IMG/VR virus record: IMGVR_UViG_3300044846_005229
Coordinates: 124,001 to 188,000 of that record
Direction: 5' to 3' (one strand)
DNA length: 64,000 nucleotides
A program made the position numbers and the translations under genes. The notes below the pieces were generated by a model. It made no database searches. It had not been told where the DNA came from and saw only the letters and a program-made list of their open reading frames with translations. Positions 4,990-20,731 of the stretch are shown here, piece by piece. How positions within the stretch are numbered: the first letter of the stretch is position 1; every line of letters begins with the position of its first letter.

Positions 4990-5190
4990 TTAGGGGCAAT
5001 TAGGGGCAACCAGGGGACGATCACCTTTGCCCACCAGGGACTTTACCATGAGTTCAGTAAATCGCTCTTGCCTGCTGGGGCAAACTGACTGGGGGTAGCC
5101 GTCAATTGCTGCCTTTAACGAGGCAAGTTCTTGCCACTCTGCCAGGCTAATGGGGGCTGGGCCAATGGGTGCAACTTGTTGTGAATTCAT
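4990..5190 (-). CDS. conserved cyanophage small protein
   Basis: MNSQQ start, ATGA overlap with upstream gene; EW.EL..LK.AI...P.SV.P..ERFTEL pattern. Confidence 0.65.
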   Translation of the reverse strand: MNSQQVAPIGPAPISLAEWQELASLKAAIDGYPQSVCPSRQERFTELMVKSLVGKGDRPLVAPNCP

Positions 5191-5516
5191 TTTGTGGTGG
5201 ATGGTGTTAGAGGTTCGGGAGTTACCACAGCGGGTGCCATAACCTTGGGAGCATACACAGTTAGGGCACGATCTACAGCAATGATCATACCGACCGGTGG
5301 AATGCAAGCTGCGAGTTTCCACCAAAACCATGGCGCAATCGCTATCCCAGCAAACCACCATGCCAAAGTAAGTAAAGATAGGACCTTCGAGATACCGAAG
5401 TCTACCTTGAGGTTGATGGTCGGTTGGTTGGTGACAGTTTCAATTGCCTTTAATGCAGTGTTGCCATTGGCGGGTTGTCTAGATGCGGAGCTAATTGATG
5501 CGGAGCTATCAGTCAT
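5187..5516 (-). CDS. small membrane protein (two predicted TM segments)
   Basis: Hydrophobic VLSLLTLAWWFAGIAIA and WWKLAACIPPVGMIIAV; TTGACT-N17-TACAAT promoter upstream. Confidence 0.65.
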   Translation of the reverse strand: MTDSSASISSASRQPANGNTALKAIETVTNQPTINLKVDFGISKVLSLLTLAWWFAGIAIAPWFWWKLAACIPPVGMIIAVDRALTVYAPKVMAPAVVTPEPLTPSTTK

Positions 5517-5699
5517 TTTAGTGGGTGTTGTGGCTGCTGGGTTATGCCGTGAACCATGAGGCTAAAGGCAATCTGGTTCTGTTCTATTGTAGGGAGTTTA
5601 CCCCCAAAAGTCAATGGGTGTTGTGGGGGGGGGGGATTTCCGTAAGACTACCATAGGTGTTGTGGCTCCGAATGCAAGGGCCATGAACGCAAGTACACG

Positions 5700-5927
5700 C
5701 TACCAGTCACCTTCTCTCAAACAACGGACTATAACCGAACCGGGTCCCGCGAGTTCTAACGCAGTAGTAATTGCGTGAGTTGAGTTGTGGGCCATTATGT
5801 TGTGGATGTGCTGTCGGGTTAATGAGTAAGTTGAGTTTAAAGTTATTTCGGTTAGGACACGATAAGGGCGAAGTTTGCCAGGTGGTGTTGTGCTTCGGGT
5901 AGGTTTGCGGTTCGGTGAGTTGACCAT
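5700..5927 (-). CDS. small hypothetical protein, start uncertain
   Basis: C-terminus IMAHNSTHAITTALELAG...RCLREGDW looks coding; N-terminus overlaps repeats. Confidence 0.45.
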   Translation of the reverse strand: MVNSPNRKPTRSTTPPGKLRPYRVLTEITLNSTYSLTRQHIHNIMAHNSTHAITTALELAGPGSVIVRCLREGDW

Positions 5928-6078
5928 CGGGTGTGATGTTACAAAACTTAACATATCAGGGCGGGGAGTTTTACCATAATGAGTTAACTATCGGGTGGCA
6001 AGGAGTTTACCACGGGGGTAGTACACTTGTACTAGCTTACCCGGTGGCAATACCCGGTGGCAATACCCGGTGGCTAAC

Positions 6079-6282
6079 TCACTTGGAGCGGCGGCGCCTC
6101 AGCTCATCCCCGTAGGTGCAAGCCTCATCGCTATAGCGGCCCTCAGCAATCGGGTTCCAGCCACGCATGGCAGCCTCGGCCTGGCGACAATCTCTGGCTG
6201 CATAGGACAGCTCGGCATCGGTCATGCTGCTGGCTTTGGTGGCCCAGGCGGTGAAATCAGCGGCGGTAGCGGCGGTGGTCAT
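6079..6282 (-). CDS. cassette gene, conserved cyanophage small protein
   Basis: Own promoter at 6308; WNP..EG.YSDE..TYGDELRRR. Confidence 0.75.
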   Translation of the reverse strand: MTTAATAADFTAWATKASSMTDAELSYAARDCRQAEAAMRGWNPIAEGRYSDEACTYGDELRRRRSK

Positions 6283-6761
6283 GGTGCCCCTTGCTTGGTA
6301 CCTACATATTGTAGCACCCTGGCGGGGGCAATGTGGCCCTTGGTTCCTGGACTCGGGAAATCGTTACGGTTCGTCACATTGCCGCAGAAGTCGAAACCAT
6401 GGGAAAGCCCCGGAAACCGGGGCGGTGGAGTCATGCCAGGCGGATCAGCAAGTGGCAATCCATGCAGCCGCCTCGGCTTCGGTAAGGGGGCCAGCGATGC
6501 AGGTGCTGTCAACCTCAAAGCAGGAACGACGCTGCCACTCGTAGCCGAACCATGCGCCATCTTCCTGACGGATTGAGAAGCCGTAGCCGTTGCGGTCAAC
6601 TCGGCGGGTGGTGGCGGCGGTGGTCATGGTGCCCCTTGCTTGGTACCTACATATTGTAGCACCCTGGCGGGGGCAATGTGGCCCTTGGTTCCTGGACTCG
6701 GGAAATCGTTACGGTTCGTCACATTGCCGCAGAAGTCGAAACCATGGGAAAGCCCCGGAAA
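6269..6761 (+). repeat. 148-bp perfect direct repeat (6269-6416 and 6614-6761) containing a whole promoter module
   Basis: Base-by-base identity read from the sequence. Confidence 0.9.
6445..6627 (-). CDS. cassette gene, hypothetical
   Basis: Own promoter at 6653 (duplicated module). Confidence 0.7.
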   Translation of the reverse strand: MTTAATTRRVDRNGYGFSIRQEDGAWFGYEWQRRSCFEVDSTCIAGPLTEAEAAAWIATC

Positions 6762-6938
6762 TCACCAGCGGGCGGCCCAGACCTTAAGCTCAGCCAGGCT
6801 GTAGGTTGCCATGCAGCCAGCGAGGGTGCCATTCTCGACCCGGTGGACCCGGTACTGACCGAACCGGCGAGTAACCCTGACATCCGGGTGACTTGCGAAA
6901 AAATCTAGGATTTGATTGCTAGTGCTCAGGGTGGCCAT
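6762..6938 (-). CDS. cassette gene, 58-aa hypothetical
   Basis: MATLSTSNQILDFFASHPDVRVTRRFGQYRVHRVENGTLAGCMATYSLAELKVWAARW; promoter at 6965; below ORF-track cutoff. Confidence 0.65.
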   Translation of the reverse strand: MATLSTSNQILDFFASHPDVRVTRRFGQYRVHRVENGTLAGCMATYSLAELKVWAARW

Positions 6939-7207
6939 TTGCCGTTTGGTTGGTTGGCTTCGTAATTATAGCATGGTTGCCGGGGGTGCCGACGGGTTTG
7001 CCGGGGTTTTGTTACGTTTAGTAATAATGCCATGGGAGTAATACAAACGTATTAGCTCACCCGGTGAGGTTGCGCTTCGGGTGAGTTGTAACAAAACTTA
7101 ATAATCCGGTGAGTTTATTATCCGGTGGCGACACAAAACTTAACACATTGGGGCAGGGAGTTTAACGGCAATGAGTTAAGGGACCTAGTAGCAAGAACCT
7201 AGATAGC

Positions 7208-7230
7208 AAAAAGCCCCGGCGAACCGGGGC
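7208..7230 (-). terminator. rho-independent terminator, UUCG loop
   Basis: GCCCCGG-TTCG-CCGGGGC-TTTTT just after stop at 7243; near-copies at 10689-10712 and 14014-14037. Confidence 0.85.
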
Positions 7231-7242
7231 AGGGCCAGATAC

Positions 7243-7428
7243 TCAGCGGCGGTAGCAAAGTTCCCGGTGGAGTGCATTGGACCTTGCGATGCAGCCCCCA
7301 AGGCTCTCGGGGCGGATCCTGGCTTCGATGCCAAGGCGACGGATGGCCCGGTGGATTTCAGGGTCCGTCATCAGGGTGGCCTCTTTCTGCCAAGCGGTGA
7401 GATCAGCGATGGTAGCGACGGCGGGCAT
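7243..7428 (-). CDS. cassette gene, weak paralog of 6079-6282
   Basis: AT.AD.TAW...A..MTD.E shared N-terminus; own promoter at 7455. Confidence 0.65.
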   Translation of the reverse strand: MPAVATIADLTAWQKEATLMTDPEIHRAIRRLGIEARIRPESLGGCIARSNALHRELCYRR

Positions 7429-8028
7429 GGTGCGTTCCGGTGCGGTACTTACATATTATATGCCAGGGATGGATGGGTGTCAAGGCGCCGGTCGGTGAGT
7501 TTACGCCCTGTAACAATGCCGGTCGGCGAGTTTACGCTCCGGGTGTCGCGCTTCGGGTGAGTTGACTATCAGGTGGCGACACAAAACTTAACATATCAGG
7601 GCAGGGAGTTTGGCGGCAATGAGTTTACTGTCAGGTGGCGACACAAAACTTAACACACCCTGGCAAGGAGTAATACACTTGTACTAGCTTGCCCGGTGTT
7701 GCTCTCCGGTGTTGCTCTCCGATGAGTTGACTATCGGTGAGTTGACTACCGGGTGCGATGTTACAAAACTTTACATATCAGGGCAGGGAGTAATACACTT
7801 GTACTATCTCACCCGGCGGCAGTTTGACCGCAATGAGTTTACCGCGAGAGTAATACACTTGTACTATCTCACCCGGTGACAATACCCGATGGCAATACCC
7901 GATGCCAATGAGTTCGACCGCAATGAGTTTACCACGGGAGTAATGCTCTTGTACTATCTTCCCCAGTGGCAATACCCATGAAAAAACCCCGGCAAGGCCA
8001 GGGCAAGGTGGGAATTGGGCCGGAACCC

Positions 8029-8265
8029 CTAGGTAAGGGTCTCGATAGACTCGATAGACTGGCTCAGCATGCCCCTCAGCTGACGCAGGGTATCAAGGGT
8101 TTCATGGGCAGGGCGGAAGATGGCTTTGCCATCGGGGCGGTACACTTCCCTCAGGGACCCAATCAGGTTGGCCAGGGCGATTCCTTCGGTGACGGCCTTC
8201 TCCACGATTCGATCCACTTCGGCGGCGACGGGGGTGGTTACGGTGGCGGTAGTGGTGGTGGGCAT
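8029..8265 (-). CDS. cassette gene, hypothetical
   Basis: Start MPTTTT at 8265; promoter at 8293. Confidence 0.7.
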   Translation of the reverse strand: MPTTTTATVTTPVAAEVDRIVEKAVTEGIALANLIGSLREVYRPDGKAIFRPAHETLDTLRQLRGMLSQSIESIETLT

Positions 8266-8338
8266 GGGTGACTCCCGGTTGGTGACTCTGTAATTGTACC
8301 ATACGGCAGGCAGGGGGCGCAAGCCCCCCTTGGGCCAC

Positions 8339-8500
8339 TCATTCCCAGGTGGCACTAGCGACCCAGCCAGGGATCCCCCGGTCGGCAAAGCCGGAATTCA
8401 TCCGCTCTGCTTCGGCGATAGCGGCTTTCTTGTTAGGGGTCTCGTATAAGGTCTCGCGACCGGTTTCGGTGCAGAGGATGACGCGGTAGATGCGGGACAT
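8339..8500 (-). CDS. cassette gene, 53-aa hypothetical
   Basis: MSRIYRVILCTETGRETLYETPNKKAAIAEAERMN...; promoter at 8526. Confidence 0.6.
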   Translation of the reverse strand: MSRIYRVILCTETGRETLYETPNKKAAIAEAERMNSGFADRGIPGWVASATWE

Positions 8501-8662
8501 TTGCGGTTTGGTGCGGTACCTCGTAATTATAGCATGGTGCCATGGGGGTGGTCAACTCCTGGACTTTAATGGCTGGCAAGCATGGTGCCAACGGAACCGT
8601 CAACCCCATGGATTCTGCGGCAGGAAGGGGGCCCGGCAGGCAACCCCCCCCCCTAGGCACCC

Positions 8663-8797
8663 TCAGGCCTCGCCCACGACAATCCAACCCTTGGGTTTCC
8701 GGCTAAGGGGGCCAGTGTAGACGACTTGCTCAAGGAAACCTTCGCGGTTGGTGCGCTCAAGCAGCCACTGGCTGGGGGTGGTGGTTTTGGTGGCCAT
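8663..8797 (-). CDS. cassette gene, 44-aa hypothetical
   Basis: MATKTTTPSQWLLERTNREGFLEQVVYTGPLSRKPKGWIVVGEA; promoter at 8836. Confidence 0.6.
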   Translation of the reverse strand: MATKTTTPSQWLLERTNREGFLEQVVYTGPLSRKPKGWIVVGEA

Positions 8798-8870
8798 TGC
8801 GGTTCGGTGGGTGACTCCCGGTTGGTGACTCTGAGATTATAGCACGGATAGGCAGGGGGCGCAAGCCCCC

Positions 8871-9086
8871 TCAGGCAGGCATCGTGAAGTATGTATCCTC
8901 TGCGTCCCATCCTTGCTGGATAAGTTCTTCAATGCCCCGCTCCCCGTCTTCCTTGGAAGGGTGCAGCCAATTCAGCTCCCAGCTCCCATCGGAGCCAACC
9001 CGGAAAGTGGCACAGACGGTACCGGGTAGGAGGTGGTAGGGGTGGCCCTCAGGGCAGTAGCAGATGGAAGGGGTGGTTGTGGCCAT
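8871..9086 (-). CDS. cassette gene, hypothetical
   Basis: Start MATTTPSICYC; consensus promoter 9118-9146. Confidence 0.7.
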   Translation of the reverse strand: MATTTPSICYCPEGHPYHLLPGTVCATFRVGSDGSWELNWLHPSKEDGERGIEELIQQGWDAEDTYFTMPA

Positions 9087-9160
9087 GGGTGGTTGCCCTT
9101 GGTTGGTTGACTCTGTGATTATAGCATGGTTCCGGGGCAGTGTCAACCCCCTAGGAACCC

Positions 9161-9625
9161 TCAAACCGCAACCACAGCAACCTTGGCAGTCTTACGGGGG
9201 GCACGCTTGCGAGCAGGGGCAGGGGCCGGTGCAGGGGCGTCGGCGGTCGCAGAGGCCTTGGTTGCCTTGGTCGTCTTAGTCGTCTTGGCGCGGCTCTTAC
9301 GGGCAGGGGCCGGTGCAGCAGCCAGCAGGGCGATAGGGCCACTTGCGGCCATCAGGACGGGAACCTCAGCGGGCACGACAATTTCCTGGAACTCAATAGC
9401 GATGCCATCGATGGCTTCAACCGTGGCCCTAGCCAGGGCAGCCAACTGATCGTTGCGGGCATCGATAGCCTCGCGGGTTTGACAACCCAGATCATAGGCA
9501 GAGTCTGCCGTGATGGTGACCACGGCGATAGCGTAAGCGATCACAATGCCAGCAATGCGGGCAGCCTTCTCAAGGGTGGGGGCCCAATCGGCTTTCAGGA
9601 TGGTTGCGATGGTGGTGGTGGCCAT
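9161..9625 (-). CDS. cassette gene with K/A/P-rich basic C-terminal tail
   Basis: PARKSRAKTTKTTKATK...PARKRAPRKTAK; TTGACA-N17-TACAAT promoter. Confidence 0.7.
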   Translation of the reverse strand: MATTTIATILKADWAPTLEKAARIAGIVIAYAIAVVTITADSAYDLGCQTREAIDARNDQLAALARATVEAIDGIAIEFQEIVVPAEVPVLMAASGPIALLAAAPAPARKSRAKTTKTTKATKASATADAPAPAPAPARKRAPRKTAKVAVVAV

Positions 9626-10039
9626 GGGTGGCGTTTCGCTTGGGACCCCTTAATTGTAAGCCATGGGTGGCCGGGTGTCAAGGTGCTGGCGGTTTTGTTT
9701 GCATTTCGTAATAATGCCAGTGGGAGTAATACAAACGTACTAGCTCACCCGGTGAGTTTGCGCTTCGGGTGTCGCGGTCCGGTGAGTTTGCCGGTCGGTG
9801 AGTTTGCGGTCCGGTGAGTTTACGCTTCGAGTGTGATGTTACAAAACTTAACACATCGGGGCAGGGAGTTTGACGGCAATGAGTTAGCCGCCCGGTGTCA
9901 ACACAAAACTTAACATTCCGGTAGCAATTTGACGGCAATGAGTTAGCTATTGGGTGTCAACACACCATGGCAGGGAGCATGTGAAACCAGCATAAAGAAA
10001 GGCCGCCGATTGGCAGCCCTTTACTATGCGGACTTTCGT

Positions 10040-10429
10040 TCACAAAGGGTTGAAATTATCATCCACATCATCCATTCTTTCAAACGTAGGGCAATGTAGC
10101 AGATTGCCACTTTGTGCATACCCGTCGATGACATATTGTGAATATTGCTTAATGTTTTGAACAGCATCTTTGCTGTCTACTGTATCCACGAACTTGCCCA
10201 TGTTATAGTATGAAATCTGATCACCATTGTGGAAGTGATAAACCCTCTTTAGAATGAGACGCATCCCACTCACAAAGAACTCCATATCGACTTGACATTC
10301 GTCCCCCACCCCAAAGTATACGGGGAATGTATACAAATCGTTAGGGGAGGGATTAGCCCAAGGGCTGGAATTTTCCCACTGAAGGGTAACTGAAGTCGTC
10401 CCACGGGAAATGATCGAGGGGGTGGGCAT
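10040..10429 (-). CDS. cassette gene, hypothetical
   Basis: Own promoter at 10453 and downstream hairpin. Confidence 0.7.
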   Translation of the reverse strand: MPTPSIISRGTTSVTLQWENSSPWANPSPNDLYTFPVYFGVGDECQVDMEFFVSGMRLILKRVYHFHNGDQISYYNMGKFVDTVDSKDAVQNIKQYSQYVIDGYAQSGNLLHCPTFERMDDVDDNFNPL

Positions 10430-10732
10430 GGTGCGTTCCGGTTGACTCTGTAATTATAGCATGGGGCGGGAGCCTGCTGTGGGTTTCCGGGAGTTTTGTT
10501 TGCATTCCGTAATAATGCCGGGTCGGTGAGTTTACGCTTCGGTAAGTTGACTATCGGGTGCGATGTTACAAAACTTAACATTCCGGTGGCAGTTTGCGGT
10601 TCGGGTGTGATGTTACAAAACTTAACACATCATGGCAGGGAGTTTGACGGCAGGGAGTTAAACCTTGAACAGCAAAAATACCGACTACAAAAAGGTCCCG
10701 GCGAACCGGGACGGGTGGGGGGGCCAAGGCCA

Positions 10733-10963
10733 TCATGCGAAGCCGTAGCGTTGCATTAGGGCCTTAGTGGCAATGCGTTCTGCCCCCGTCATGTAGTCCA
10801 ACAGGTGTTCAGCGCCGTCTGCGGAGACCTCCTCGAATGCCTCTTCTTTCTTGATTCCATAGTGGCTGGAAATGTTGCCCAGAATGTTATCCCGGGTGGC
10901 TGCATCAATCGCAACGAGGAAAACGTAGTTCAGCCTGCCCTGGGGAACGGTGGTGGTGGTCAT
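10733..10963 (-). CDS. cassette gene, hypothetical
   Basis: Start MTTTTVPQG; promoter at 10989; UUCG terminator. Confidence 0.7.
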   Translation of the reverse strand: MTTTTVPQGRLNYVFLVAIDAATRDNILGNISSHYGIKKEEAFEEVSADGAEHLLDYMTGAERIATKALMQRYGFA

Positions 10964-11297
10964 TTGCCTTTCGGTGCGGGACCCCCTAATTGTAGCACAC
11001 TGCGGGGGCCTGCTGTGGGGTGCCGGTGGTTGTCGGTAGTTTTGTTTGCGTTTTGTTACCATTGGGAATTAGCCGCCAGGAGTAATACACTTGTACTAGC
11101 TCACCCGGTGGTATAATCCCGCAGGCACTTTACGCTTCGGGTTAGTTGTAACAAAACTTAATAATCCGGTGAGTTAACTACCGGGTGCCAACACAAAACT
11201 TAACACATCGTGGCAGGGAGTTTGACCGTAATGAGTTAAACCCCCAAACAGCAAGCCCCAGCAAAGCCAGGGCAGTAGCAACAACCTGATGCAACCC

Positions 11298-11504
11298 TCA
11301 ACCTCGCGCAACCCTGGCAAAGTCCAGATCGGGATAAACCACCAGCTCCCTAGGCAGGCTGCGGGCGCGACGGGCCCAGGCGTACTCGTCGGTGTACATC
11401 GCCTCGATGCGGGCATTATCACGGGCCACGACAGCGGTGATACGCTCACGGGCGGCAGCGCGGCGGTCGGAGGCGATCTGGGCGCGGTAGGTGGTGGGGG
11501 CCAT
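11298..11504 (-). CDS. cassette gene, hypothetical
   Basis: Promoter at 11532. Confidence 0.65.
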   Translation of the reverse strand: MAPTTYRAQIASDRRAAARERITAVVARDNARIEAMYTDEYAWARRARSLPRELVVYPDLDFARVARG

Positions 11505-11888
11505 TTGCCGTTTGGTGCGGTTGACTCTGTAATTGTAGCATATGGCCGGGGGTGCTGGGTGGTGCCGGTAGGTGCCGGGGGGTTTTGTTTACGTTTGGTT
11601 GCCATTGGGGGTTAGCCGCCAGGAGTAATACACTTGTACTAGCTCACCCGGTGAGTTTACGCTTCGGGTGTGATGTTACAAAACTTAACAATCCGGTGGC
11701 AGCTTCACGGCAATGAGTTAGCTATCCGGTGTCAACACAAAACTTAACATTTCTGGGGTAGCTTCACGGCAATGAGTTAGCTATCCGGTGTCAACACAAA
11801 ACTTAACACATCAAGGCAGGGAGTTTGACGACAAAGAGTTATCGCACCGGCCAGCAAAAAGCCCCCGGATGATGGAGGCAGTATGGGC

Positions 11889-12179
11889 TCAATCAACGAT
11901 AGCTGACCACTCGTTGGCATCAATGCCAGGGTGGACGTGTGCCTCGTAAAGACGGGTGCCGTCAGTGAGCTGGGCGACACAGAGGTAGTGATCTGTTTGG
12001 GCCATGCAACCAGCAATGTGGAGAACCGCGCCGGTTGCGGCGTGGCGAAAATCGGCAAGGTCGCTGATATAAGTGGTGCCGATGACAGCAGATTGCTTGC
12101 GCATGTACGGGGTGCTGGCACGCTCGGCAGCCTGCTCGGCGATGGTCAGAACCTCTTCGTCGGTGAGGGTGGTGGCCAT
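11889..12179 (-). CDS. cassette gene, hypothetical
   Basis: Start MATTLTDEE; promoter at 12208. Confidence 0.7.
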   Translation of the reverse strand: MATTLTDEEVLTIAEQAAERASTPYMRKQSAVIGTTYISDLADFRHAATGAVLHIAGCMAQTDHYLCVAQLTDGTRLYEAHVHPGIDANEWSAIVD

Positions 12180-12256
12180 GGGTGACTCCCGGTTGGTGAC
12201 TCTGTGATCATAGCATGGATGGGCCAGGGAACGCAAGCCCCCTAACCCCGTGGCGC

Positions 12257-12418
12257 TCAGGCGACTCTGACGTGGAGGCCCCGAGCGATCTCTTTAAGTT
12301 CGGACTCAGAGCGGAAAACCAGCATGAGCCAGAAATCTCCGGTGACTTCAAGATTGTTAGCCTTGATGACGTTCATGATGTCGTGGCGGAGGGCTTGCTT
12401 GCGTTGGGTGGTGGTCAT
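12257..12418 (-). CDS. cassette gene, conserved cyanophage small protein
   Basis: Start MTTTQRKQ; LEVTGDFWLMLVFRSESEL. Confidence 0.7.
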   Translation of the reverse strand: MTTTQRKQALRHDIMNVIKANNLEVTGDFWLMLVFRSESELKEIARGLHVRVA

Positions 12419-12468
12419 GGGTGGCTCCCGGTTGGTTGACTCTGTAATTATAGCACGGGGCCGTAGAG

Positions 12469-12702
12469 TCAGCAATAAGCGTTTAGAGATCCGTATGGAT
12501 TGGCCGAAAGATTGAAAAAACCCTCGTAGCTTTCCGCTTCAGTGCGTGCCATTGGCATCAATGGAGGGGGTGACTGAGAGGAGCCCCACTGGTGGCGATC
12601 ATTTGCTCTAGCGAGGTGATGATGATGCTTAATCCTGGAGCGTGTTTCACTCCAGTAGCAAGCGGTTCCATGAAAGTAGCCGTAGCCGGTCGAATTGGTC
12701 AT
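12469..12702 (-). CDS. cassette gene, hypothetical
   Basis: Start MTNSTGYGY; promoter at 12735. Confidence 0.6.
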   Translation of the reverse strand: MTNSTGYGYFHGTACYWSETRSRIKHHHHLARANDRHQWGSSQSPPPLMPMARTEAESYEGFFNLSANPYGSLNAYC

Positions 12703-12757
12703 GGGTGGTGATGCCGGTAGTTTGGGACTCCGCAATTATAGCATGAATGGCAGGGGG

Positions 12758-12964
12758 TTAGTCGTCGTTCCAGCATTGGCACCTAGGGTCAAGTACCCCA
12801 CAGCCCCGGCACGCCATCGAGATGAGACGCAATCGCTCGTCATCGCTTAGCTGTGCAAACTTAGCGGCAGCAGCCCCAAACTTACTTTCAACCGGCTTCC
12901 ATGACCCGTCTGGAGTGGTGCGAAACCAGAGAATGCCGCCCTCAAACTTCTCTTCGTAATACAT
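12758..12964 (-). CDS. cassette gene with C-terminal Cys cluster
   Basis: CRGCGVLDPRCQCWNDD; promoter at 12989. Confidence 0.7.
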   Translation of the reverse strand: MYYEEKFEGGILWFRTTPDGSWKPVESKFGAAAAKFAQLSDDERLRLISMACRGCGVLDPRCQCWNDD

Positions 12965-13087
12965 AGTGCCTTCGGGGTGGTGACTCTGTAATTATAGCAG
13001 GTTGGGGGCCGTAGCTGTGGGCGCTGTTGAGTTTTGTAACAATCGATGCGGAAAGGGGTCACCGGCTGGCAACCCCCCCCTTAGCAA

Positions 13088-13360
13088 TCAGCCCATCCCC
13101 GCAACCCTAGCAAGCTCTTGCATGGTGCAGGGGGAAGAACCCATCAGAGGCAAAATCGCAACTTCCATATGCGAATGCAGATTCTGCCAGCGAATAGCAG
13201 CAGCAGCAGCATCCTCAATGGACCAGCCTTCTACGGGGCCACCCTGCAGGAACCAGCGGCGCTGATGGGCTGTGGGGGTCTCAGGCTTGACGCGAGCCCA
13301 CAGGCGGTAGGTTGTTGCCGGGGCGGCGGGTTGCATCGGGGCGGTGGTTGCAGTAGCCAT
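13088..13360 (-). CDS. cassette gene, hypothetical
   Basis: Start MATATTAP; promoter at 13389. Confidence 0.65.
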   Translation of the reverse strand: MATATTAPMQPAAPATTYRLWARVKPETPTAHQRRWFLQGGPVEGWSIEDAAAAAIRWQNLHSHMEVAILPLMGSSPCTMQELARVAGMG

Positions 13361-13501
13361 CGTTGCGGTGTCGGTTGGGGACCTCGTAATTATAGCACAG
13401 GGGGCCAGAGAACACAATCCCTAACCCCTCGTGACGGCAGGCAGGGGGCCAACACAGTGTCAACCCCATGGCATTGTCAACCCTTGGGCATTGTCAACCC
13501 C

Positions 13502-13741
13502 TCAAACGGCAGCCAGGGCATCCAGGGCGGCAGCCAGGGCGGTGGAGGGGAAGTAGCGGTCCTCACCTTCGCAGATATCCGACAGGCACCAGCGGAAACC
13601 ACGACGGGTCGCATCAGCGGTCAGGATGTAGTCGGCACCTTTGAAGAAGGCACGGGATCCTTCGCTAAATTCCACACCGGCAGGGAGGCCTTTGCGGATG
13701 GCAGCGTTGATCATGGCGGAGGGGGTTGTGAGGCAGACCAT
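13502..13741 (-). CDS. cassette gene, hypothetical
   Basis: Promoter at 13768. Confidence 0.65.
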   Translation of the reverse strand: MVCLTTPSAMINAAIRKGLPAGVEFSEGSRAFFKGADYILTADATRRGFRWCLSDICEGEDRYFPSTALAAALDALAAV

Positions 13742-14064
13742 TTGCCGGGGGGGTGCGTTACCTCGTAATTATAGCACAGGGCCGAGGGTGCTGGGGGGTT
13801 GCCGGTAGGTGCCGGTGGTTTTGTTTACATCTGGTAACATTGCCGGTCAATGAGTTTGCAGTTCGGTGAGTTAACTATCGGGTGTGATGTTACATAACTT
13901 AACATACTGGGGCAGGGAGTTTAACGGCAATGAGTTTACTGCCAGGTGGCGACACAAAACTTAACACATCAAGGCAGGGAGTTTGACGACAAAGAGTTAT
14001 TGCACCGGCCAACAAAAAAAACCCCGGCGAACCGGGGCAGGGGCAGGGCAGTATCGGGGGGGTA

Positions 14065-14277
14065 TCAGCCTACGCCTTGTCCCCAGACGGTTAAGCAGCG
14101 GTCTCGGGCGACCCGGTAGGATTCAAGCTCCCTGCGGTTGAGATCCAACATGGGGCGATAACCGTTGATACCAGCCTCACATGCCGCTTTCCAAGCAGCC
14201 TCAGCACGGTCGATAGCGCATTGGGCGATATTAGCCCAAGCATCGGCGGAGATGGTTGCGGTGGTGGTGGGGGCCAT
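14065..14277 (-). CDS. cassette gene, hypothetical
   Basis: Start MAPTTT; promoter at 14302; UUCG terminator. Confidence 0.65.
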   Translation of the reverse strand: MAPTTTATISADAWANIAQCAIDRAEAAWKAACEAGINGYRPMLDLNRRELESYRVARDRCLTVWGQGVG

Positions 14278-14419
14278 TGCCGTTTGGTGCGGTACCCTGA
14301 AATTATAGCATGGTGCAGGGGCAATTGCGGGGTGCCGTTTGATGACGTTTGGTAACAATGCCGTTTGAGTAGTAGGTTTGTACTAGCTTGCCCGTGGTTT
14401 GTTTGCGGTCCGGGTGTGA

Positions 14420-14660
14420 TGTTACAAAACTTAACATTCCGATGGCAGTTTGTGAGTCTGTATTAACTACCCGGTGGCAACACAAAACTTAACATTCCGA
14501 TGGCAGTTTGTGAGTCTGTATTAACTACCCGGTGGCAACACAAAACTTAACATTCCGATGGCAGTTTGACGGCAAGGAGTTTACCATCAGGTGCCAACAC
14601 AAAACTTAACATTCCGATGGCAGTTTGACGGCAAGGAGTTTACCATCAGGTGGCAACACC
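14420..14660 (+). repeat. tandem amplification of the HLR1-like spacer unit (two 59-bp and two shorter copies)
   Basis: acaaaacttaacattccgatggcagtttg repeated four times. Confidence 0.9.
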
Positions 14661-14717
14661 ACGGCAAGGAGTAATACACTTGCACAAGTGTGTCCGGTGG
14701 TAATACCAGGTGTCAAT

Positions 14718-14793
14718 ATGGGGACTGTGGGGATCGAACCCAAACCTCCGCCGATTTATGAGATCGGAGCATTCACCAGATTGCTAAGCCCCC
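14718..14793 (-). tRNA. tRNA-Met/Ile2 (anticodon CAT), possibly degenerate
   Basis: Anticodon arm CCGAT-CTCATAA-ATCGG, GGTTCGATCC T-loop; G1 mismatch, weak T-stem, no CCA. Confidence 0.7.
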
Positions 14794-14822
14794 GTGTTTT
14801 CAGTTTGCCCTAGTTTGAGTTT

Positions 14823-14938
14823 TGTTGCGCTTCGTGATGATAGGCACGGCATGTTGCGCTTCGTGATGATGGGCATGGCATGTTGCGCTTCGTGGCGATA
14901 GGCACGGCATGTTGCGCTTCGTGATGGTAGGCATGGTG
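14823..14938 (+). repeat. 4 x 29-bp tandem repeat resembling the -10/leader module
   Basis: tgttgcgcttcgtgatgataggcacggca and variants at 14823, 14852, 14881, 14910. Confidence 0.85.
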
Positions 14939-14957
14939 CTGTTACGTTCTGCAACAT

Positions 14958-15215
14958 TCAAACCATTCTCACCATCGGGTGAAGATGCGAGCCGGTTTTC
15001 GGGTCTGGCGGATAGATTCGGAGGGTGATAACTTCGTCACCATACGCTTCGATGACATCCTCCAGACTGGGGAACCAGTCTCCAGTGTAGCCGTCTATGA
15101 CGCAGAATTCGTAGTCGTCGCCATCTGCATAACCATCGGCAAGAACCGGCGTGATATTGGCAGGCAGATCGCCCAACCTGGTGAGGATGGCATCCAGGGT
15201 AGTTGCGGTGACCAT
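14958..15215 (-). CDS. cassette gene, acidic hypothetical
   Basis: DGYADGDDYEF; promoter at 15241. Confidence 0.7.
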   Translation of the reverse strand: MVTATTLDAILTRLGDLPANITPVLADGYADGDDYEFCVIDGYTGDWFPSLEDVIEAYGDEVITLRIYPPDPKTGSHLHPMVRMV

Positions 15216-15320
15216 TTGCGGTTTGGGTAGTGACTCTGTAAGTATAGCATAGGGCCAACGGAACCGTCAACCCCTGGATTTAATCCTGCGGCAGGCAAGG
15301 GGCCAACACAGTGGCAACCA

Positions 15321-15497
15321 TCACCCAATGCCTTCCCGGTCGTATTCGCCAAAGGTTGCCTCAAATTCTGCACGGTCATCGTAGAATTCAGCCTGAGCGT
15401 CGGGATCACCGTCAGCCAGGGCTTGGAGGAATTTTAGGGTATCGCCGTCAGTGGCGGTGGTGGTGGTGGCGGTAATGGTTGTTGAAGTGGGGGCCAT
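15321..15497 (-). CDS. cassette gene, 58-aa acidic protein
   Basis: MAPTSTTITATTTTATDGDTLKFLQALADGDPDAQAEFYDDRAEFEATFGEYDREGIG; promoter at 15521. Confidence 0.65.
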   Translation of the reverse strand: MAPTSTTITATTTTATDGDTLKFLQALADGDPDAQAEFYDDRAEFEATFGEYDREGIG

Positions 15498-16094
15498 TTT
15501 TTTCTCCGGGGTGTCTGTCTATTGTAGCATAGTGCTGGGGGGTTGGGGTTTGCGGGTCGGGTGCCTCGGGATGGATGCCAGGGGTTGGATTCCAGGGGTT
15601 GGATTCCAGGGGTATCGTTGACTCCTAGGGGTGAGGTGGACAGTTTGTTAAGTGTCCATCTGACCTAAAGGAGTATCGTGCCAGGGAGTTTGGTGCCCAA
15701 GGGTTAGTGCCAGTATTAGACTTTGGGTGCGTTTTATGAGTAATGTGGAACCTCAGGGTGCTTTTTGCGAGTAATGTGGAACGCCCCAAAATAAAAATCG
15801 AAAATTCAATCCTTGAGATCGACTGCAGCGGAACGGAGTTACTCCTAAAAAAATTAAAAATTTTAGGACCTAGTTGAAATCCATCCAAAAAATTCTACAT
15901 TTGAATGCATATTATGCACCCTACTACTATAATCGCATATAAATTATTTAATAGAGTGTACTTATGTTAGTTGTACAATCAATAAGTTTTTCTTATTCTT
16001 AGGTACAATCAATGAGTTAAGGGCCAGAAGACAAAAAAAAAGGGGGGATAACCCTAAGGCAATCCCCCATTCTTTGTACTAAGTTTATCGCCAA

Positions 16095-16433
16095 TCAATC
16101 ATTCTTGGCCTTCCATGCACGCAACCGGCTAATTGCCTCCTCTACGCTGCTGGCATTAGACTTGCGGAATTTGGCCGTTTTGCTATAGGAAAACATTTCA
16201 ATCTTCCCACCCCCGATGGAAAACATTGCGTAGCGGGAATTGTGGAAGATTCCGTTAATCCATTCTTCCTTAGGGTCTAGGGATACCTTGACGATTAGGG
16301 AAGCGTTTTGCTCACCGCCAAGGGTAGACCTTTGCACAGAAGAAACCGGGAAGGTGGCATTCAGGGAAGCAGCCAGGGTGTCGCGATCGGTTTCGGTCGG
16401 GATGAAGGCAGTTGCGAGGGTTGCGGTGGCCAT
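16095..16433 (-). CDS. cassette gene, hypothetical
   Basis: TTGCGC-N17-TATAAT promoter; hairpin plus T-run at 16032-16070. Confidence 0.75.
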   Translation of the reverse strand: MATATLATAFIPTETDRDTLAASLNATFPVSSVQRSTLGGEQNASLIVKVSLDPKEEWINGIFHNSRYAMFSIGGGKIEMFSYSKTAKFRKSNASSVEEAISRLRAWKAKND

Positions 16434-16511
16434 GGGGCGCTCCGGTGGGTGACCCTGTAATTATAGCACGAAAGGGAAGGGGGCGCAAGCCCCCCAACCC
16501 CCGGCCATCAC

Positions 16512-16808
16512 TCACACAGCAGGGACCCGGCTACCGGCAGCGATCACCCCTTTGCCTTTCATCTCATCCAGCAGGGTAACGAAAGCGGCAGCGATGGCGT
16601 TCTTGGTGGCACGACCGGTTAGCTCAACCCGGAAACTCCGGCAGCTGAAGGGCAGGCATGTGAACATGCTGTAGCCGGTGCGGGTCTCTACAGTGCCCTC
16701 ACTGGCAGTAACCCTAGCAGGGCGGCCAGCGGGCTTGTAGAAGGTTACCTGGAAGACAGCTCCAGGGTTGTCAAGGCTGTTCACGTAGAAGGAATTGGGG
16801 GTTGCCAT
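16512..16808 (-). CDS. cassette gene, hypothetical
   Basis: Start MATPNS; promoter at 16845. Confidence 0.7.
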   Translation of the reverse strand: MATPNSFYVNSLDNPGAVFQVTFYKPAGRPARVTASEGTVETRTGYSMFTCLPFSCRSFRVELTGRATKNAIAAAFVTLLDEMKGKGVIAAGSRVPAV

Positions 16809-16895
16809 TGCGGTTCGGGGTGGTTGCCGTTGGTTGACTCTGTAATTGTACCATACAGCAGGCAGGGGGGCGCAAGCCCCCAACCACTCAAGGCA

Positions 16896-17228
16896 TCAAA
16901 TGGCCAGGGCTCGGACGCCTATGATCTTGCCTTCCCCGTCTCTCACTACGTTCTGGGGGCCAGTATCTGGGCGGTAAAGATCGGTCCGGTTGGGGGCTGC
17001 CTGTTGAACCAACATAGAAACAACAAAAATAGTACCCTCTTCGGGATCAGGGAGATTCTCTACATCCCCAAAAGTAGTCCGGGTGACGGGGATTCCATTA
17101 ATTTTGAATACCTCTTCTGTTACTGAAGATACCCGTGCCGCAGGAGCGGTTGGGGCAATAGTAAAGACTTCTCCGTTCTCCTTGTACAGATGAAGGGGGT
17201 GGGGGGTGAGGTTGATGATGGTGGCCAT
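16896..17228 (-). CDS. cassette gene, conserved viral NLTPH-motif protein
   Basis: IINLTPH...LPDPEEGTIFVVS...VRD.EGKIIG pattern recalled from diverse viruses. Confidence 0.75.
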   Translation of the reverse strand: MATIINLTPHPLHLYKENGEVFTIAPTAPAARVSSVTEEVFKINGIPVTRTTFGDVENLPDPEEGTIFVVSMLVQQAAPNRTDLYRPDTGPQNVVRDGEGKIIGVRALAI

Positions 17229-17311
17229 TGCGGCGTTCCGGTGTGGTTGACTCTGTAATTATAGCACAAAGGGGAAGGGGGGCAACCCTAAGGCAAACCC
17301 CAGGCCATCAC

Positions 17312-17560
17312 TCACACGGCGGGCAGGTAAATCTCTAGGGTATAGGTAACCTCAGCCTCATTATAGGCAGCCAAGGTATCGGCCAGCTCCCCAAGTGACA
17401 CATAGTCGCTGTATTCACCATCATCTACAAGGAAATCGACCTCATCGCCATCGGCAGGTTCTTCCGACAGGAAGGGAGCGCAGAACGGGCTCAGCGTAAC
17501 GGGCAAGGTGGCGAGGATTTCAGCCAGGGTAGGAGCAGTGGGGGCGGTTGCGGTAGCCAT
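17312..17560 (-). CDS. cassette gene, highly acidic protein
   Basis: EEPADGDEVDFLVDDGEYSDY; no K or R in the sequence. Confidence 0.7.
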   Translation of the reverse strand: MATATAPTAPTLAEILATLPVTLSPFCAPFLSEEPADGDEVDFLVDDGEYSDYVSLGELADTLAAYNEAEVTYTLEIYLPAV

Positions 17561-17628
17561 GGTGCGGTCTCGGTGGGTGACTCTGTAATTATAGCACGAA
17601 AGGGAAGGGGGCGCAAGCCCCCCACAAG

Positions 17629-17808
17629 TTAGAATCTGATGACGGGATGGCCGGGGTCAAGAGTGTCACATGCTTCAGTTGTGAAAACCAACTTAACTTT
17701 CTGGCCAAAATGCTCATCAATTCCCTCGTCATAAACTGTAACGTTAGAGTCTAGTTGTTCATCGGTGAATTGTTGCAGTTGCTGAAGCAGTTCCCGGTAG
17801 GTAATCAT
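17629..17808 (-). CDS. conserved cyanophage small protein (59 aa)
   Basis: MITYRELLQQLQQFTDEQLDSNVTVYDEGIDEH...TLDPGHPVIRF, hand-translated. Confidence 0.7.
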   Translation of the reverse strand: MITYRELLQQLQQFTDEQLDSNVTVYDEGIDEHFGQKVKLVFTTEACDTLDPGHPVIRF

Positions 17809-17962
17809 TGCGGTTCGGTGTGGGACCCCTTAATTATTACACATCGGTAGGCAGAACGCAAGAGGCCGGGTCGTTTGTTTGCGTTTTGTGACAGTGCCAC
17901 GCGAGTAGTATGTTTGTACTAACTGACCCGGTATCAATACCAGTAGGCAATGAGTTTGCCTA

Positions 17963-17997
17963 AGTATAAAAAAAAGAGGGGGCTGTCAACCCCCCCT
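17963..17997 (-). terminator. terminator hairpin with embedded promoter
   Basis: AGGGGGG-TTGACAG-CCCCCCT followed by T-run; TTGACA-N16-TATACT. Confidence 0.6.
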
Positions 17998-18019
17998 AAC
18001 TCAACTATCATTCTTACCA

Positions 18020-18256
18020 TCATTCGCAAACTTTCGGTAGTACGGTACCATGCACCAAATAGCCATACCTTTCGATGCCATACTTGTGCAAAATATGCAC
18101 ATTGGGCCATGATTCGCCTTGTCCCCAAGTACCTGACTGACTCATACGCTCAAAAGCACATTCAACGCTGTTACGCAGCCAGGAATGATCGATACGGGAT
18201 GCTGATGCCGCTTGGTTGCTGCGGTAGTTGCGGTACTTGGGGGCGGGGAATGCCAT
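18020..18256 (-). CDS. cassette gene, hypothetical
   Basis: Start MAFPAPK; promoter at 18286. Confidence 0.55.
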   Translation of the reverse strand: MAFPAPKYRNYRSNQAASASRIDHSWLRNSVECAFERMSQSGTWGQGESWPNVHILHKYGIERYGYLVHGTVLPKVCE

Positions 18257-19183
18257 TGTTGCCGGTGGTTGGTTGGCTCCGTAATTATAGCACATTGCCT
18301 CGGGGGTTGGGGCCCCGGATTGCTGACTCCCAAGGTGTGGTGGACAGTTTGTAAACTGTCTATTTGACTTCGTGAGTTTGACTTTTAGGGTTTGATTCTG
18401 GGGTGTGTTTTCGGGGTCAATGTGGAATCTCAGAGTGCTTTTTGCAGGTAATGTAGAATGCCTAATTTGAAAAGTCTGAAAGTCAACCGCTGAGATCGAC
18501 TGCAGGGCAACGGAGTTACTCCTAAAAAAATTAAAAATTTTAGGACCTAGTGAAAAACGATCCAAAAAATTCTACATTTGAATGCATATTCTGCACCCTA
18601 GGGTCTTTATATACACTTTTTCGCGAATATATGTATAATAAGTGTTTATTCTATGTTGTTATAGTTTGTTGTTGATGAGTCCAAGTAATAAACAACTGGG
18701 ATACGGTCTCAACAGTCTCAGTTAAGTATCGGAATGATGTCACACTTCAAGAGTAAGCAGATGGGTGCGTTTTTCCAGTAATGTAGAAACCCGGGGTGCA
18801 TTTTGCCGGTAATGTAGAATGCCCCAAATTAAAAACCTGAAATTCAATCCCTGAGATCGACTGCAGGGGAACGGAGTTACTCCTAAAATTTTTGAATTTT
18901 TTAGGACCTAATGGAAAACCATCCAAAAAATTCTACATTTGAATGCAAATTCTGCACCCTACTACTATATACTCGCGTAAAAATTATTTAATAGAAGACT
19001 CTTATCTTAATGTCTAGACAGATAAGTAATTCTTATCAATCTAATCCCCCATCAAACCGCAATGTTGTGGGCTATTCGAGGATGCTAACCGGAGTCTCAC
19101 CAAATAGCAAAGGGGCCGATGCCTAAGCACCAACCCCCAAACATTAAACTAAGGTCAATCTAAGGCCAAACCAAAGTCCGAAT

Positions 19184-19369
19184 TCAGGTATAGAAACGAA
19201 TCTGAGCCAGGAAGCACTCCCGGCGTTGCTTGCGGAGGATGGTGCGGATGCGTTTCGCCTGCGTGAGGGTCCACACTCGATTGCCAACGGGCTCAGACCA
19301 CGGTTTGCGGGTGATTTCCTGAACGGTATAAAAGATGCGGGTTTTCTTGGTTGCGATTGCGGTGGCCAT
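19184..19369 (-). CDS. cassette gene, basic small protein
   Basis: Start MATAIATKK; promoter at 19404. Confidence 0.65.
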   Translation of the reverse strand: MATAIATKKTRIFYTVQEITRKPWSEPVGNRVWTLTQAKRIRTILRKQRRECFLAQIRFYT

Positions 19370-19523
19370 TGTGGCGGTGTTGGTTGGTTGGTGACAGGTG
19401 AATTGTAGCATGGTGGCCGGGGGCTGTCAATGCCGTTGTGGCAAGGGGGCCCAGTTCTCAAAATTTTCGGAGGGGGCGTTAGCCCCTTGCCATCTGGTTA
19501 TAACCCTCTGGCTACCATCCCTA

Positions 19524-19590
19524 GGCATCAATCCCAGGGCATCAATCCCAGGGCATCAATCCCAGGGCATCAATCCCAGGGCATCATCCC
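19524..19590 (+). repeat. 14-bp tandem repeat gcatcaatcccagg (4-5 copies)
   Basis: Direct reading; related units at 38440-38500. Confidence 0.8.
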
Positions 19591-19786
19591 CTAGGCTAGG
19601 CCGTGAGAACTTCGGGTATATACCCCCTGTCCTAATCAGCCACCCAGCATCCACAAGGTCTTGGGCAGCATCGAGAACGCCCGCAACGTGGAAGTAGCCG
19701 ACAAGACCCACCGTATCAACGGATACACCTGGGCGGTTCAGGAAGTACAGCTTAAGGGACTCGCGGATCCACTCAGGGGATTTCAT
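19556..19786 (-). CDS. cassette gene, possible winged-helix fragment
   Basis: Start MKSPEW; AAQDLVDAGWL; C-terminus runs into tandem repeat. Confidence 0.5.
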   Translation of the reverse strand: MKSPEWIRESLKLYFLNRPGVSVDTVGLVGYFHVAGVLDAAQDLVDAGWLIRTGGIYPKFSRPSLGDDALGLMPWD

Positions 19787-19946
19787 GGTTGCTTGGGGTG
19801 AGACTACAGTAGTATAACACAAAGGGGCCAGGATTGCCTATGGGTGATGGCAATGGCAGTATAGCACAAAAGGCCAGGGGTACAAGCCCCCTAGCCCAGT
19901 GAATGCAACGGTTTCGTCACCCTTCTGAATTCAATAGATGGGAGTC

Positions 19947-20177: not shown

Positions 20178-20265
20178 TGGGGTCCGGGGTGGTTGCCCTT
20201 GGTTGGTTGACTCTGTAAGTGTAGCATAGGGCCGACACGGTGTCAACCCCCCCCCCCTTGGGCTT

Positions 20266-20568: not shown

Positions 20569-20731
20569 GGTTGCCCTTGGTTGGTTGACTCAGGTATTAT
20601 AGCACGGATGGGGATGGTGCCGTTACGATCTGAAACAACAGGCATGGACCACAGGCAGGCAGGCCCCCGCCCGACAAGTTGACTTCGGTATTATAGCACA
20701 GGCAGGCAGGGGGCGCAAGCCCCCCCACAGG

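What the first reader, a model, noticed from the sequence alone, without database searches (positions are those of the whole stretch)
6269..6761. One 148-bp promoter module duplicated perfectly in front of two unrelated genes
Seen: 6269-6416 equals 6614-6761. The unit holds the upstream motif, -10, leader and first codons (ATG ACC ACC GCC GC), then diverges into different ORFs (6079-6282 and 6445-6627). Inference: a snapshot of recent cassette insertion. Recombination between the copies would excise a 345-bp circle carrying exactly one promoter-gene unit.
Basis: partly seen in the sequence, partly recalled or inferred. Interest (0 to 1): 0.62.

Follow-up and report, generated by a model that had tools for sequence, protein, structure and literature searches.

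The report
Duplicated promoter module brackets phage cassette
Two identical 148-base control modules bracket a tiny gene in the early region of an uncultured lake jumbo cyanophage, and related strains show that such modules are the seams at which small genes and their promoters are swapped, gained and lost, as already described for T4-type phages.

Summary
Window 6269-6416 equals 6614-6761 exactly (148 nt). Independent metagenome assemblies and the k-mer graphs of four lake runs (2020-2024) reproduce it.

All genes here read on the minus strand: D, C, module, B (60 aa), module, A (67 aa). The module holds half a GC terminator hairpin, a conserved operator-like motif, an extended -10 promoter, a 25-nt leader, the ATG and 11 coding bases.

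The window lies in a complete 279-kb phage that is not T4-like. Its early region carries about 39 such promoter-plus-small-ORF units.

Related strains decide the interpretation. L042, L045 and L032 have the same B-A order but non-identical modules, and there A has its own leader type. L043/L044 carry a different ORFan (E) in place of B. L032 carries E and B. Two assemblies (L050, L052) carry C-module-A, exactly the predicted 345-bp deletion.

So this is a recombination hot spot of PeSL type. The perfect identity arose when the module that normally follows gene C replaced A's own promoter, leader and start. The order of events is unresolved: conversion then deletion, or deletion then re-insertion of B.

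No circle was observed. This is a known kind of mechanism in a new phage lineage, of moderate interest.

The parts
7243..7428 (-). Gene D, a 61-aa ORFan. Its first 30 residues are 50% identical to gene A. It has a perfect TTGACA-17-TATAAT promoter at 7483-7455 and a canonical terminator at 7230-7213.
6762..6938 (-). Gene C, a 58-aa ORFan with its own extended -10 promoter at 6992-6965. Its TGA stop abuts repeat copy 2.
6614..6761 (-). Repeat copy 2, the module between C and B. Read on the minus strand it holds the terminator loop and 3' arm only (6761-6752), the conserved 23-nt core with TGTGAC-N5-GTAAC (6728-6706), the extended -10 TGCTACAAT (6661-6653), the 25-nt leader with AAGGGG (6652-6628), and ATG plus 11 nt of B (6627-6614).
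6445..6627 (-). Gene B, a 60-aa ORFan and the bracketed cassette. Relatives at about 89% nucleotide identity, confined to the coding sequence, lie in siphovirus-like cyanophage contigs.
6407..6423 (-). Complete 7-bp GC hairpin with a 3-nt loop, followed by TTTCCC, after gene B. Its loop and 3' arm are the first bases of repeat copy 1.
6269..6416 (-). Repeat copy 1, the module between B and A. Same parts as copy 2: core 6383-6361, -10 at 6316-6308, leader 6307-6283, ATG plus 11 nt of A at 6282-6269. At least 6360-6279 is of the type that sits behind gene C in other strains, not the type that precedes A there.
6079..6282 (-). Gene A, 67 aa. It belongs to a small protein family spread over T4-like (S-SRM01), siphovirus (S-2L) and other cyanophage contigs. 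Only its first four or five codons come from the repeat.
6269..6278 (-). The 10-nt stretch CCACCGCCGC, also present at 6614-6623. It is shared by the first codons of A-type and B-type genes, is the gene-side recombination joint, and is in frame.

Best explanation
The repeat is two copies of a composite intergenic control module. Each holds a terminator hairpin, an operator-like motif, an extended -10 sigma-70-type promoter, a leader and the first codons. The copies flank the small ORFan B in the hyperplastic early region of an uncultured, non-T4, 279-kb lake cyanophage.

Such modules stand between all the small genes here. Because they resemble each other, general homologous recombination uses them as seams. 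In the population the seams have shuffled both the cassettes (B, E, both or neither) and the promoter-leader type in front of each gene.

In the window's lineage the module that normally follows gene C (leader type alpha) overwrote A's own module (type beta). One joint lies in or near the shared hairpin. The other lies in the 10 nt shared by the first codons. B is thereby bracketed by perfect 148-nt direct repeats, and A and B have identical expression signals.

I favour gene conversion between the two neighbouring modules, followed by loss of B through recombination between the repeats in some genomes.

Shown: the identity, the mosaic structure and the haplotypes. Inferred: promoter and terminator activity, the recombination pathway, the order of events and any circle.
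For: 1. Mosaic structure. In the 87-nt promoter-leader half, the window's A-side copy equals its own B-side copy and L042's B-side copy (87/87). L042's and L032's A-side modules match those only 61/88, yet match each other 83/88. Upstream (the tail after B) and downstream (the codons) the window's A-side copy is of A type: 34/34 and 27/28.

2. Assortment among strains.
- Leader alpha precedes B in the window, L042 and L032, and precedes E in L044.
- Leader beta precedes A in L042, L045 and L032.
- Leader gamma precedes B in L045 and A in L044.
- Cassette content is C-B-A, C-E-A or E-B-A.

3. Distant A homologs carry the consensus-type leader, not alpha, and none starts MTTAA. B-family proteins natively start MT[TA]A.

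4. The region is a dense array: 39 extended -10 promoters with a common leader in front of small ORFs. GC hairpins are enriched upstream of them, 8 of 39 against 6% in controls.

5. The exact predicted deletion form C-R-A is assembled from two further samples, with flanks 100% identical from 7645 to 5466.

6. The window's module is itself patchy: one stretch of its 5' half matches other strains' A-side copies and its 3' half is alpha. This fits repeated conversion.

7. No tyrosine integrase is found in the genome, with working positive controls.

8. The same mechanism is documented for PeSLs of T4-type phages, including mini-circles of about 400 bp and crossovers in the stem-loop or between the -10 and the ATG (PMC2839356).
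Against: - The direction of events is not fixed. The same three haplotypes follow if B plus A's module were first deleted through the 10-nt stretch, and B then came back by one unequal crossover with a B-carrying strain.
- The C-R-A contigs could be assembler loop-collapses at low coverage.
- Promoter and terminator function is untested. The simple scan called neither the -35 nor the terminator of this module, the hairpin's T-tract is weak, and its fold z-score is only -1.1.
- Only 8 of 39 promoters in the region have a clean hairpin.
- Strain phylogeny is mosaic: B groups the window with L042, while A groups L042 with L032. Parsimony arguments are therefore soft.
- No RecA-type recombinase was found in the phage, so the enzymes are unknown.
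Confidence: 0.72

Rival explanations
1. A genome of the form C-R-A existed first, and the B cassette with one module copy was inserted recently by a single crossover in the module, either from a B-carrying co-infecting strain or from an excised circle. The repeats are the footprint of that insertion.
For: C-R-A contigs exist with flanks identical to the window. One unequal crossover between such a genome and an L042-like genome would give the window's structure (inference). B is absent from another strain, L043/L044. PeSL circles and re-insertion are proposed in PMC2839356.
Against: It still needs an earlier event that put the alpha module in front of A. For 148/148 identity it also needs the 5' halves of the parental modules to have been identical already, whereas they differ at four or more sites in every strain with two module types. 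The C-R-A contigs are few: 2 assemblies against 10 contigs of the window type. They may be assembly collapses.
Confidence: 0.3
2. A dedicated, site-specific cassette system, integron-like or hairpin-directed. The hairpin plus the invariant 23-nt core would be a recombination site, and 345-bp circles would be true mobile cassettes.
For: The 23-nt core is nearly invariant in all 10 modules of 5 strains while its surroundings vary. The repeat starts in a hairpin loop. A and B occur in unrelated phage families.
Against: No tyrosine integrase is found in the complete genome, with positive controls. Joints differ from case to case: hairpin, mid-module, first codons. The loop-edge boundary is explained by a deletion between short direct repeats. 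The core belongs to a palindromic motif family found upstream of other promoters, which fits an operator.
Confidence: 0.05
3. An assembly artefact: a repeat or strain mixture wrongly joined.
For: The repeat (148 nt) is about as long as a short read, so no single read spans it. One arrangement, C-R-A, may indeed be a collapse.
Against: At least 4 independent assemblies span the locus identically. All four junction k-mer paths are present in 4 runs, with the repeat at twice the flank depth. Diverged strains have the same order with distinguishable modules.
Confidence: 0.02
4. A simple tandem duplication of a promoter-gene unit, followed by divergence of the second gene.
For: The copies are direct, and the first codons are shared.
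Against: A and B have separate families of relatives in other phages. There is no similarity beyond about 35 nt into the coding sequence.
Confidence: 0.01

Closest known systems
PeSLs (promoter-early stem-loops) of T4-type phages: Arbiol et al. 2010 (PMC2839356), Comeau et al. 2014 (PMC4122927)
   Same: Both are composite terminator-hairpin plus host-type early promoter plus ribosome site plus ATG. Both are repeated between ORFans of a hyperplastic region. Insertions, deletions and replacements between close relatives are bounded by the modules. A cassette of about 350-400 bp between two modules can be looped out. Crossovers are seen in the stem-loop and between the -10 and the ATG.
   Different: The phage is not T4-like: no Gp23 and no T4 portal. 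The promoter is an extended -10 without a good -35. The hairpin lies about 90 nt upstream rather than within or next to the promoter. There is no AT-rich tract but a palindromic operator-like motif. The homology runs into the first codons. Circles have not been observed here. The sequences are not homologous to PeSLs, so this is an analogue.
Morons and modular exchange at conserved linker sequences in lambdoid and other phages (from general knowledge)
   Same: Small self-contained promoter-gene-terminator units of variable presence. B and A occur in unrelated phages of the same host group.
   Different: In the other phages B's homology stops at the ends of the coding sequence. The unit that moves between phage families is therefore not the module-plus-gene seen here.
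Integron gene cassettes (attC hairpin, circular intermediates)
   Same: A single small ORF, a hairpin at the cassette boundary, and the prospect of a circular form.
   Different: There is no integrase. Each cassette has its own promoter. Joints are scattered within the homology.
Gene conversion and concerted evolution of neighbouring repeats (from general knowledge)
   Same: A patch of one copy is overwritten by its neighbour and flanked by unconverted sequence. The result is zero divergence within a genome but divergence between strains.
   Different: Here the converted unit is regulatory, and it changes which signals drive a gene.

Membership tests
PeSL-type regulatory cassette | Intergenic composite of a host-type (sigma-70-like) early promoter with a stem-loop | tested here: inconclusive
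   An extended -10 TGCTACAAT is present in both copies. The -35 is poor and the consensus scan did not call it. A 7-bp GC hairpin is complete only at copy 1, and at the orthologous place in L042 and L045. Activity is untested.
PeSL-type regulatory cassette | Many copies concentrated in a hyperplastic region, immediately upstream of ORFans | tested here: met
   39 of the 76 minus-strand TGNTANAAT sites lie in genome 129-160.5 kb, nearly all 23-40 nt before a small ORF with a common leader. A, B, C, D and E have no Pfam, PHROG or PADLOC family above threshold.
PeSL-type regulatory cassette | Stem-loop present in most modules | tested here: not met
   Only 8 of 39 promoters have a perfect GC-rich hairpin of 6 bp or more within 140 nt upstream, against 6% in controls. 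Six of the eight are GGGGGC-TTGC-GCCCCC overlapping the -35 region.
PeSL-type regulatory cassette | Insertions, deletions and replacements between close relatives are bounded by the modules | tested here: met
   The haplotypes C-B-A, C-E-A, E-B-A and C-A all have their joints inside the modules. Three leader types are recombined with three genes.
PeSL-type regulatory cassette | Excised mini-circles detectable (inverse PCR) | not testable with these tools
   Only k=31 contigs of the runs were available. They break at the repeat and cannot show a circle.
PeSL-type regulatory cassette | Carried by T4-like myoviruses, the only group in which PeSLs were described | tested here: not met
   Gp23 (PF07068) and Portal_T4 (PF07230) are absent from the complete genome. 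S-SRM01 and contig G001 score E about 1e-150 in the same search.
Integron-like cassette | Tyrosine-recombinase integrase and a defined attC/attI junction | tested here: not met
   PF00589 is absent from the genome while all 14 controls ring. Junctions are variable.
Tandem gene duplication | The two downstream genes are paralogs | tested here: not met
   A and B share only their first codons and have distinct homolog sets.

The most novel reading that the evidence does not exclude
The modules may be more than passive homology. The hairpin plus the invariant 23-nt core could be a recognised site. Promoter-gene circles of about 345 bp excised at it could serve as vehicles that carry small early genes between unrelated cyanophage families. 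That would fit the presence of A in T4-like, siphovirus-like and this jumbo phage, and the shared promoter-leader consensus seen in front of A in a T4-like contig.
Probability: 0.08. Interest if true: 0.75.

Novelty: new member of a known kind. Interest (0 to 1): 0.42.

Why it matters
It gives a natural, population-level picture of how the ORFan-rich early regions of large phages are rebuilt. Five haplotypes of one locus occur in public lake metagenomes. Their joints lie in repeated terminator-promoter modules, and promoters are reassigned to genes as freely as genes are gained and lost.

Module-mediated shuffling was described for T4-type coliphages and vibriophages. It was judged unlikely in the one cyanophage examined, S-PM2 (PMC4503421). 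Here it is seen in an unrelated jumbo cyanophage.

The perfect 148-nt repeats and the matching B-less contigs make a concrete, cheap test possible: spanning reads, or inverse PCR on lake viral DNA.

For annotation, it warns that identical upstream regions in such genomes mark recombination, not co-ancestry of the genes.

Tried and rejected
Searches that found nothing:
- Megablast of 5000-9000 against isolated phages.
- Exact 30-mer of the module in viral contigs.
- Gene B in viral contigs.
- Module and gene B in five genomes carrying A homologs. These later proved to be other phage types, at least one of them T4-like, so their silence says little.
- Metagenome-contig scan with the alpha-leader pattern. 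The collection apparently lacks or hides the known carriers. The second scan, with the conserved core, gave L043-L045.
- Pfam, PHROGs and PADLOC for A, B, C, D and E gave no family above threshold.
- The ESM Atlas look-up for A and B gave only unnamed clusters.

Ideas dropped:
- 'Copy 2 is the derived copy because its hairpin is truncated.' L042 and L045 show the truncation is a later deletion.
- The module's core as an NtcA site. This was a recollection only; the spacing and position do not fit, and it was not tested.
- A tandem amplification of B, suggested by a 1.6-fold B depth in run X4. The repeat depth does not fit, and coverage is about 9x.

Limits of the read data:
- Read laying was given 4001 letters.
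- Logan contigs cannot tell C-R-A from C-R-B-R-A except by depth. B is at or above its flanks in all four runs, so no large B-less fraction exists there.

Full report
OBSERVATION

Window 6269-6416 and 6614-6761 are identical over 148 nt, 345 nt apart. Similarity continues with one mismatch to 6262/6607 and, with a gap, to 6248/6592. It is the longest near-perfect repeat of the genome.

The genes are on the minus strand, in this order: D (7428-7243), C (6938-6762), repeat copy 2, B (6627-6445), repeat copy 1, A (6282-6079). Both B and A start inside the repeat with ATG ACC ACC GCC GC.

WHERE IT LIES

The window is bases 124001-188000 of a 279,339-bp virus record with 124-bp terminal repeats, rated complete. 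The sequence is held by at least 24 lake-water runs.

The phage is not T4-like. Gp23 and the T4 portal are absent, while Synechococcus phage S-SRM01 and a 258-kb contig score E about 1e-150 in the same search. It encodes a bacterial-type sliding clamp, a CysRS and a thymidylate kinase.

The host is probably a freshwater Synechococcus-type picocyanobacterium. Relatives of A lie in S-SRM01 and S-2L, and one relative of B sits in a Synechococcaceae MAG.

IS THE DUPLICATION REAL?

Yes.
- Four JGI assemblies from different samples span D-C-R-B-R-A at 99.7-100% (L035-L038). Ten contigs in all carry both exact proteins.
- Logan contigs (k=31) of four runs from 2020 to 2024 break exactly 30 nt inside each repeat edge. 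They give the same 257-nt B piece with no difference.
- In run X1 the 148-nt piece has depth 103. The A flank has 43, B 58 and C 59.
- B is never below its flanks, so those four runs hold no large B-less fraction.

ANATOMY OF THE MODULE (minus-strand sense)

- It begins with the loop and 3' arm of a 7-bp GC hairpin. The hairpin is complete only at copy 1, where the 5' arm is the end of B's tail (6423-6407). The T-tract is weak, and the simple scan did not call it a terminator.
- Next is a 23-nt core holding TGTGAC-N5-GTAAC. This motif family occurs 26 times in the window against 1.6 expected, nearly all in the early region.
- About 45 nt further on is an extended -10, TGCTACAAT, without a good -35.
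- A 25-nt leader with AAGGGG follows, then the ATG.

Promoter, terminator and operator functions are inferred from sequence only.

THE REGION

Extended -10 sites on the minus strand number 76 in the genome. Of these, 39 lie in genome 129-160.5 kb (window about 5-36.5 kb). Nearly all lie 23-40 nt before a small ORF, with a shared leader and Thr/Ala-rich first codons. GC hairpins precede 8 of the 39, against 6% at random places. This is a hyperplastic early region made of promoter-ORFan units.

THE GENES

A, B, C, D and E have no Pfam, PHROG or PADLOC family above threshold, and the Atlas gave no lead.
- A belongs to a small family found in 22 viral contigs and in S-SRM01 and S-2L. In those, its upstream region is a consensus-type leader and its N-terminus is never MTTAA.
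- B has relatives at 88-95% protein identity in siphovirus-like contigs (RusA, Sipho_Gp157, SSB, YqaJ neighbours). The DNA homology of about 89% stops at the ends of the coding sequence. Their N-termini natively read MT[TA]A.

THE DECISIVE COMPARISON

Related strains of the same phage were recovered through exact and near-exact proteins and through the conserved core. The modules fall into three leader types, here called alpha, beta and gamma (alignments A2 and A3).

| Strain or contig | Gene order | Module types |
|---|---|---|
| Window | C-B-A | alpha before B, alpha before A (identical) |
| L042 | C-B-A | alpha before B, beta before A |
| L045 | C-B-A | gamma before B, beta before A |
| L032/L033 | E-B-A | alpha before B, beta before A |
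| L043/L044 | C-E-A | alpha before E, gamma before A |
| L050/L056, L052 | C-A | one alpha module |

- E is an 85-aa ORFan absent from the window's genome.
- In the C-A contigs the sequence is identical to the window from 7645 to 5466 apart from the missing 345 nt.

Segment counts make the mosaic plain. In the 87-nt promoter-leader half:
- the window's A-side copy equals its own and L042's B-side copies (87/87);
- the A-side copies of L042 and L032 match those only 61/88;
- the A-side copies of L042 and L032 match each other 83/88.

The tail before the module and the codons after it are of A type in the window (34/34 and 27/28). At least 6360-6279, and at most 6416-6269, of the A-side module has therefore been replaced by the other module. 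The gene-side joint lies in the 10 nt CCACCGCCGC, which both gene starts share, and it is in frame.

The sharp upstream edge of copy 2 is a separate event. L042 and L045 have a complete hairpin after C, flanked by a short direct repeat (TTTCCGGG). The window and L044 have lost the stretch between the repeats.

HOW IT MOST LIKELY WORKS

The modules are repeated, partly conserved sequences at every gene boundary, and general homologous recombination uses them. The outcome is shuffling of cassettes and of promoter-leader types.

For the window I favour gene conversion between the two neighbouring modules. The window's module is itself patchy: one stretch of its 5' half equals the A-side copies of L042 and L045, while its 3' half is alpha. 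This suggests more than one exchange. Loss of B by recombination between the perfect repeats would then give the C-A form.

The reverse order needs the same number of events and cannot be excluded. In it, B plus the beta module is deleted through the 10-nt stretch, and B then returns by one unequal crossover. The strain phylogeny is mosaic.

The C-A contigs could also be loop-collapses by the assembler.

No integrase is encoded, which argues against a site-specific system. No RecA-type protein was found either, so the recombination enzymes are unknown.

COMPARISON WITH WHAT IS KNOWN

The closest known system is the PeSL of T4-type phages. These are composite terminator-promoter cassettes in hyperplastic regions that mediate ORFan insertions, deletions and swaps. 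They give mini-circles of about 400 bp upward, with crossovers mapped to the stem-loop or between the -10 and the ATG (PMC2839356; PMC4122927).

The present case works like that but is not a member in the strict sense:
- the phage lineage is different;
- the promoter is an extended -10;
- the hairpin is distant from the promoter;
- an operator-like motif stands in place of an AT tract;
- most promoters of the region lack a hairpin.

In cyanophage S-PM2 a PeSL mechanism was considered and judged unlikely (PMC4503421).

VERDICT

However, the identity marks a promoter replacement at an old arrangement rather than simply a fresh insertion.

This is a new member of a known kind, of moderate interest.

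Noticed in passing
window 6016-17921, minus strand only: A 19-nt motif, TAGTACAAGTGTATTACTC, occurs 11 times against 0.01 expected. All copies are on the gene strand, in non-coding arrays between cassettes (for example 7668-7956), and it is conserved in related strains upstream of promoters. It may be a phage-specific promoter or a binding-site array.
   Followed up: partly
window 5937-27070: The palindromic motif TGTTAC-N5-GTAAC (often TGTTAAGTTTTGTAACA) occurs 26 times against 1.6 expected, clustered in the early region. The invariant core of the repeat is a member. It looks like an operator for an unknown regulator.
   Followed up: partly
window 6300-35700, minus strand: About 39 extended -10 promoters share a leader (TACAGAGTCAACCAACC...) and are followed by ORFs that start MAT.. 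or MTT... A very similar -10 plus leader precedes the A homolog in a T4-like cyanophage contig (L003), so unrelated phages of this host group share early promoter-leader consensus.
   Followed up: partly
genome 276047-276181 vs 277105-277239, and 242175-242288 vs 257711-257824 (outside the window): Two further near-perfect intergenic repeats (135 nt at 99%, 114 nt at 100%) lie in AT-richer parts of the genome. The second holds two palindromes. They may be the same kind of module homogenisation.
   Followed up: partly
window 6262-6282; L044 1993-2030; L032 750-775: The start of gene A carries a variable number of ACC-GCC-GCY units among strains (MTTAATAADF, MATAATAATAADF, MATATAADF). It behaves as a triplet-repeat-like slippage or recombination spot.
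   Followed up: partly
window 5077-5137 and 5453-5465: Clusters of strain differences are seen both in Logan contigs of runs X9 and X11 and in contig L050. A second haplotype block starts about 800 nt beyond gene A.
   Followed up: no
window 7243-7428 and 6079-6282: Genes D and A share their first 30 residues (50% identity) but not the rest, so they are paralogous or have recombined N-terminal parts.
   Followed up: no
window 6653-6640 vs L026 upstream of its B homolog: The alpha module's -10 and the bases after it (GCTACAATATGTAG) match the promoter in front of B homologs in siphovirus-like contigs at 13 of 14 positions, unlike the genome's own consensus. This is a weak hint that B once arrived with its core promoter.
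   Followed up: no
window 15700-30400; 36820-37549 vs 52609-53335; 40814-41315: There are many diverged paralogous segments (75-88% identity) among the early cassettes. A 730-nt paralog pair is also present, as is a pentapeptide-repeat gene with internal 15-nt periodicity.
   Followed up: no
window 14719-14793, 60096-60184, 62802-62891, 63305-63376; 43128-44555: Four tRNA genes (Met, Ser-TGA, Ile-TAT, Arg-TCT) and a full-length cysteinyl-tRNA synthetase are encoded by the phage.
   Followed up: no
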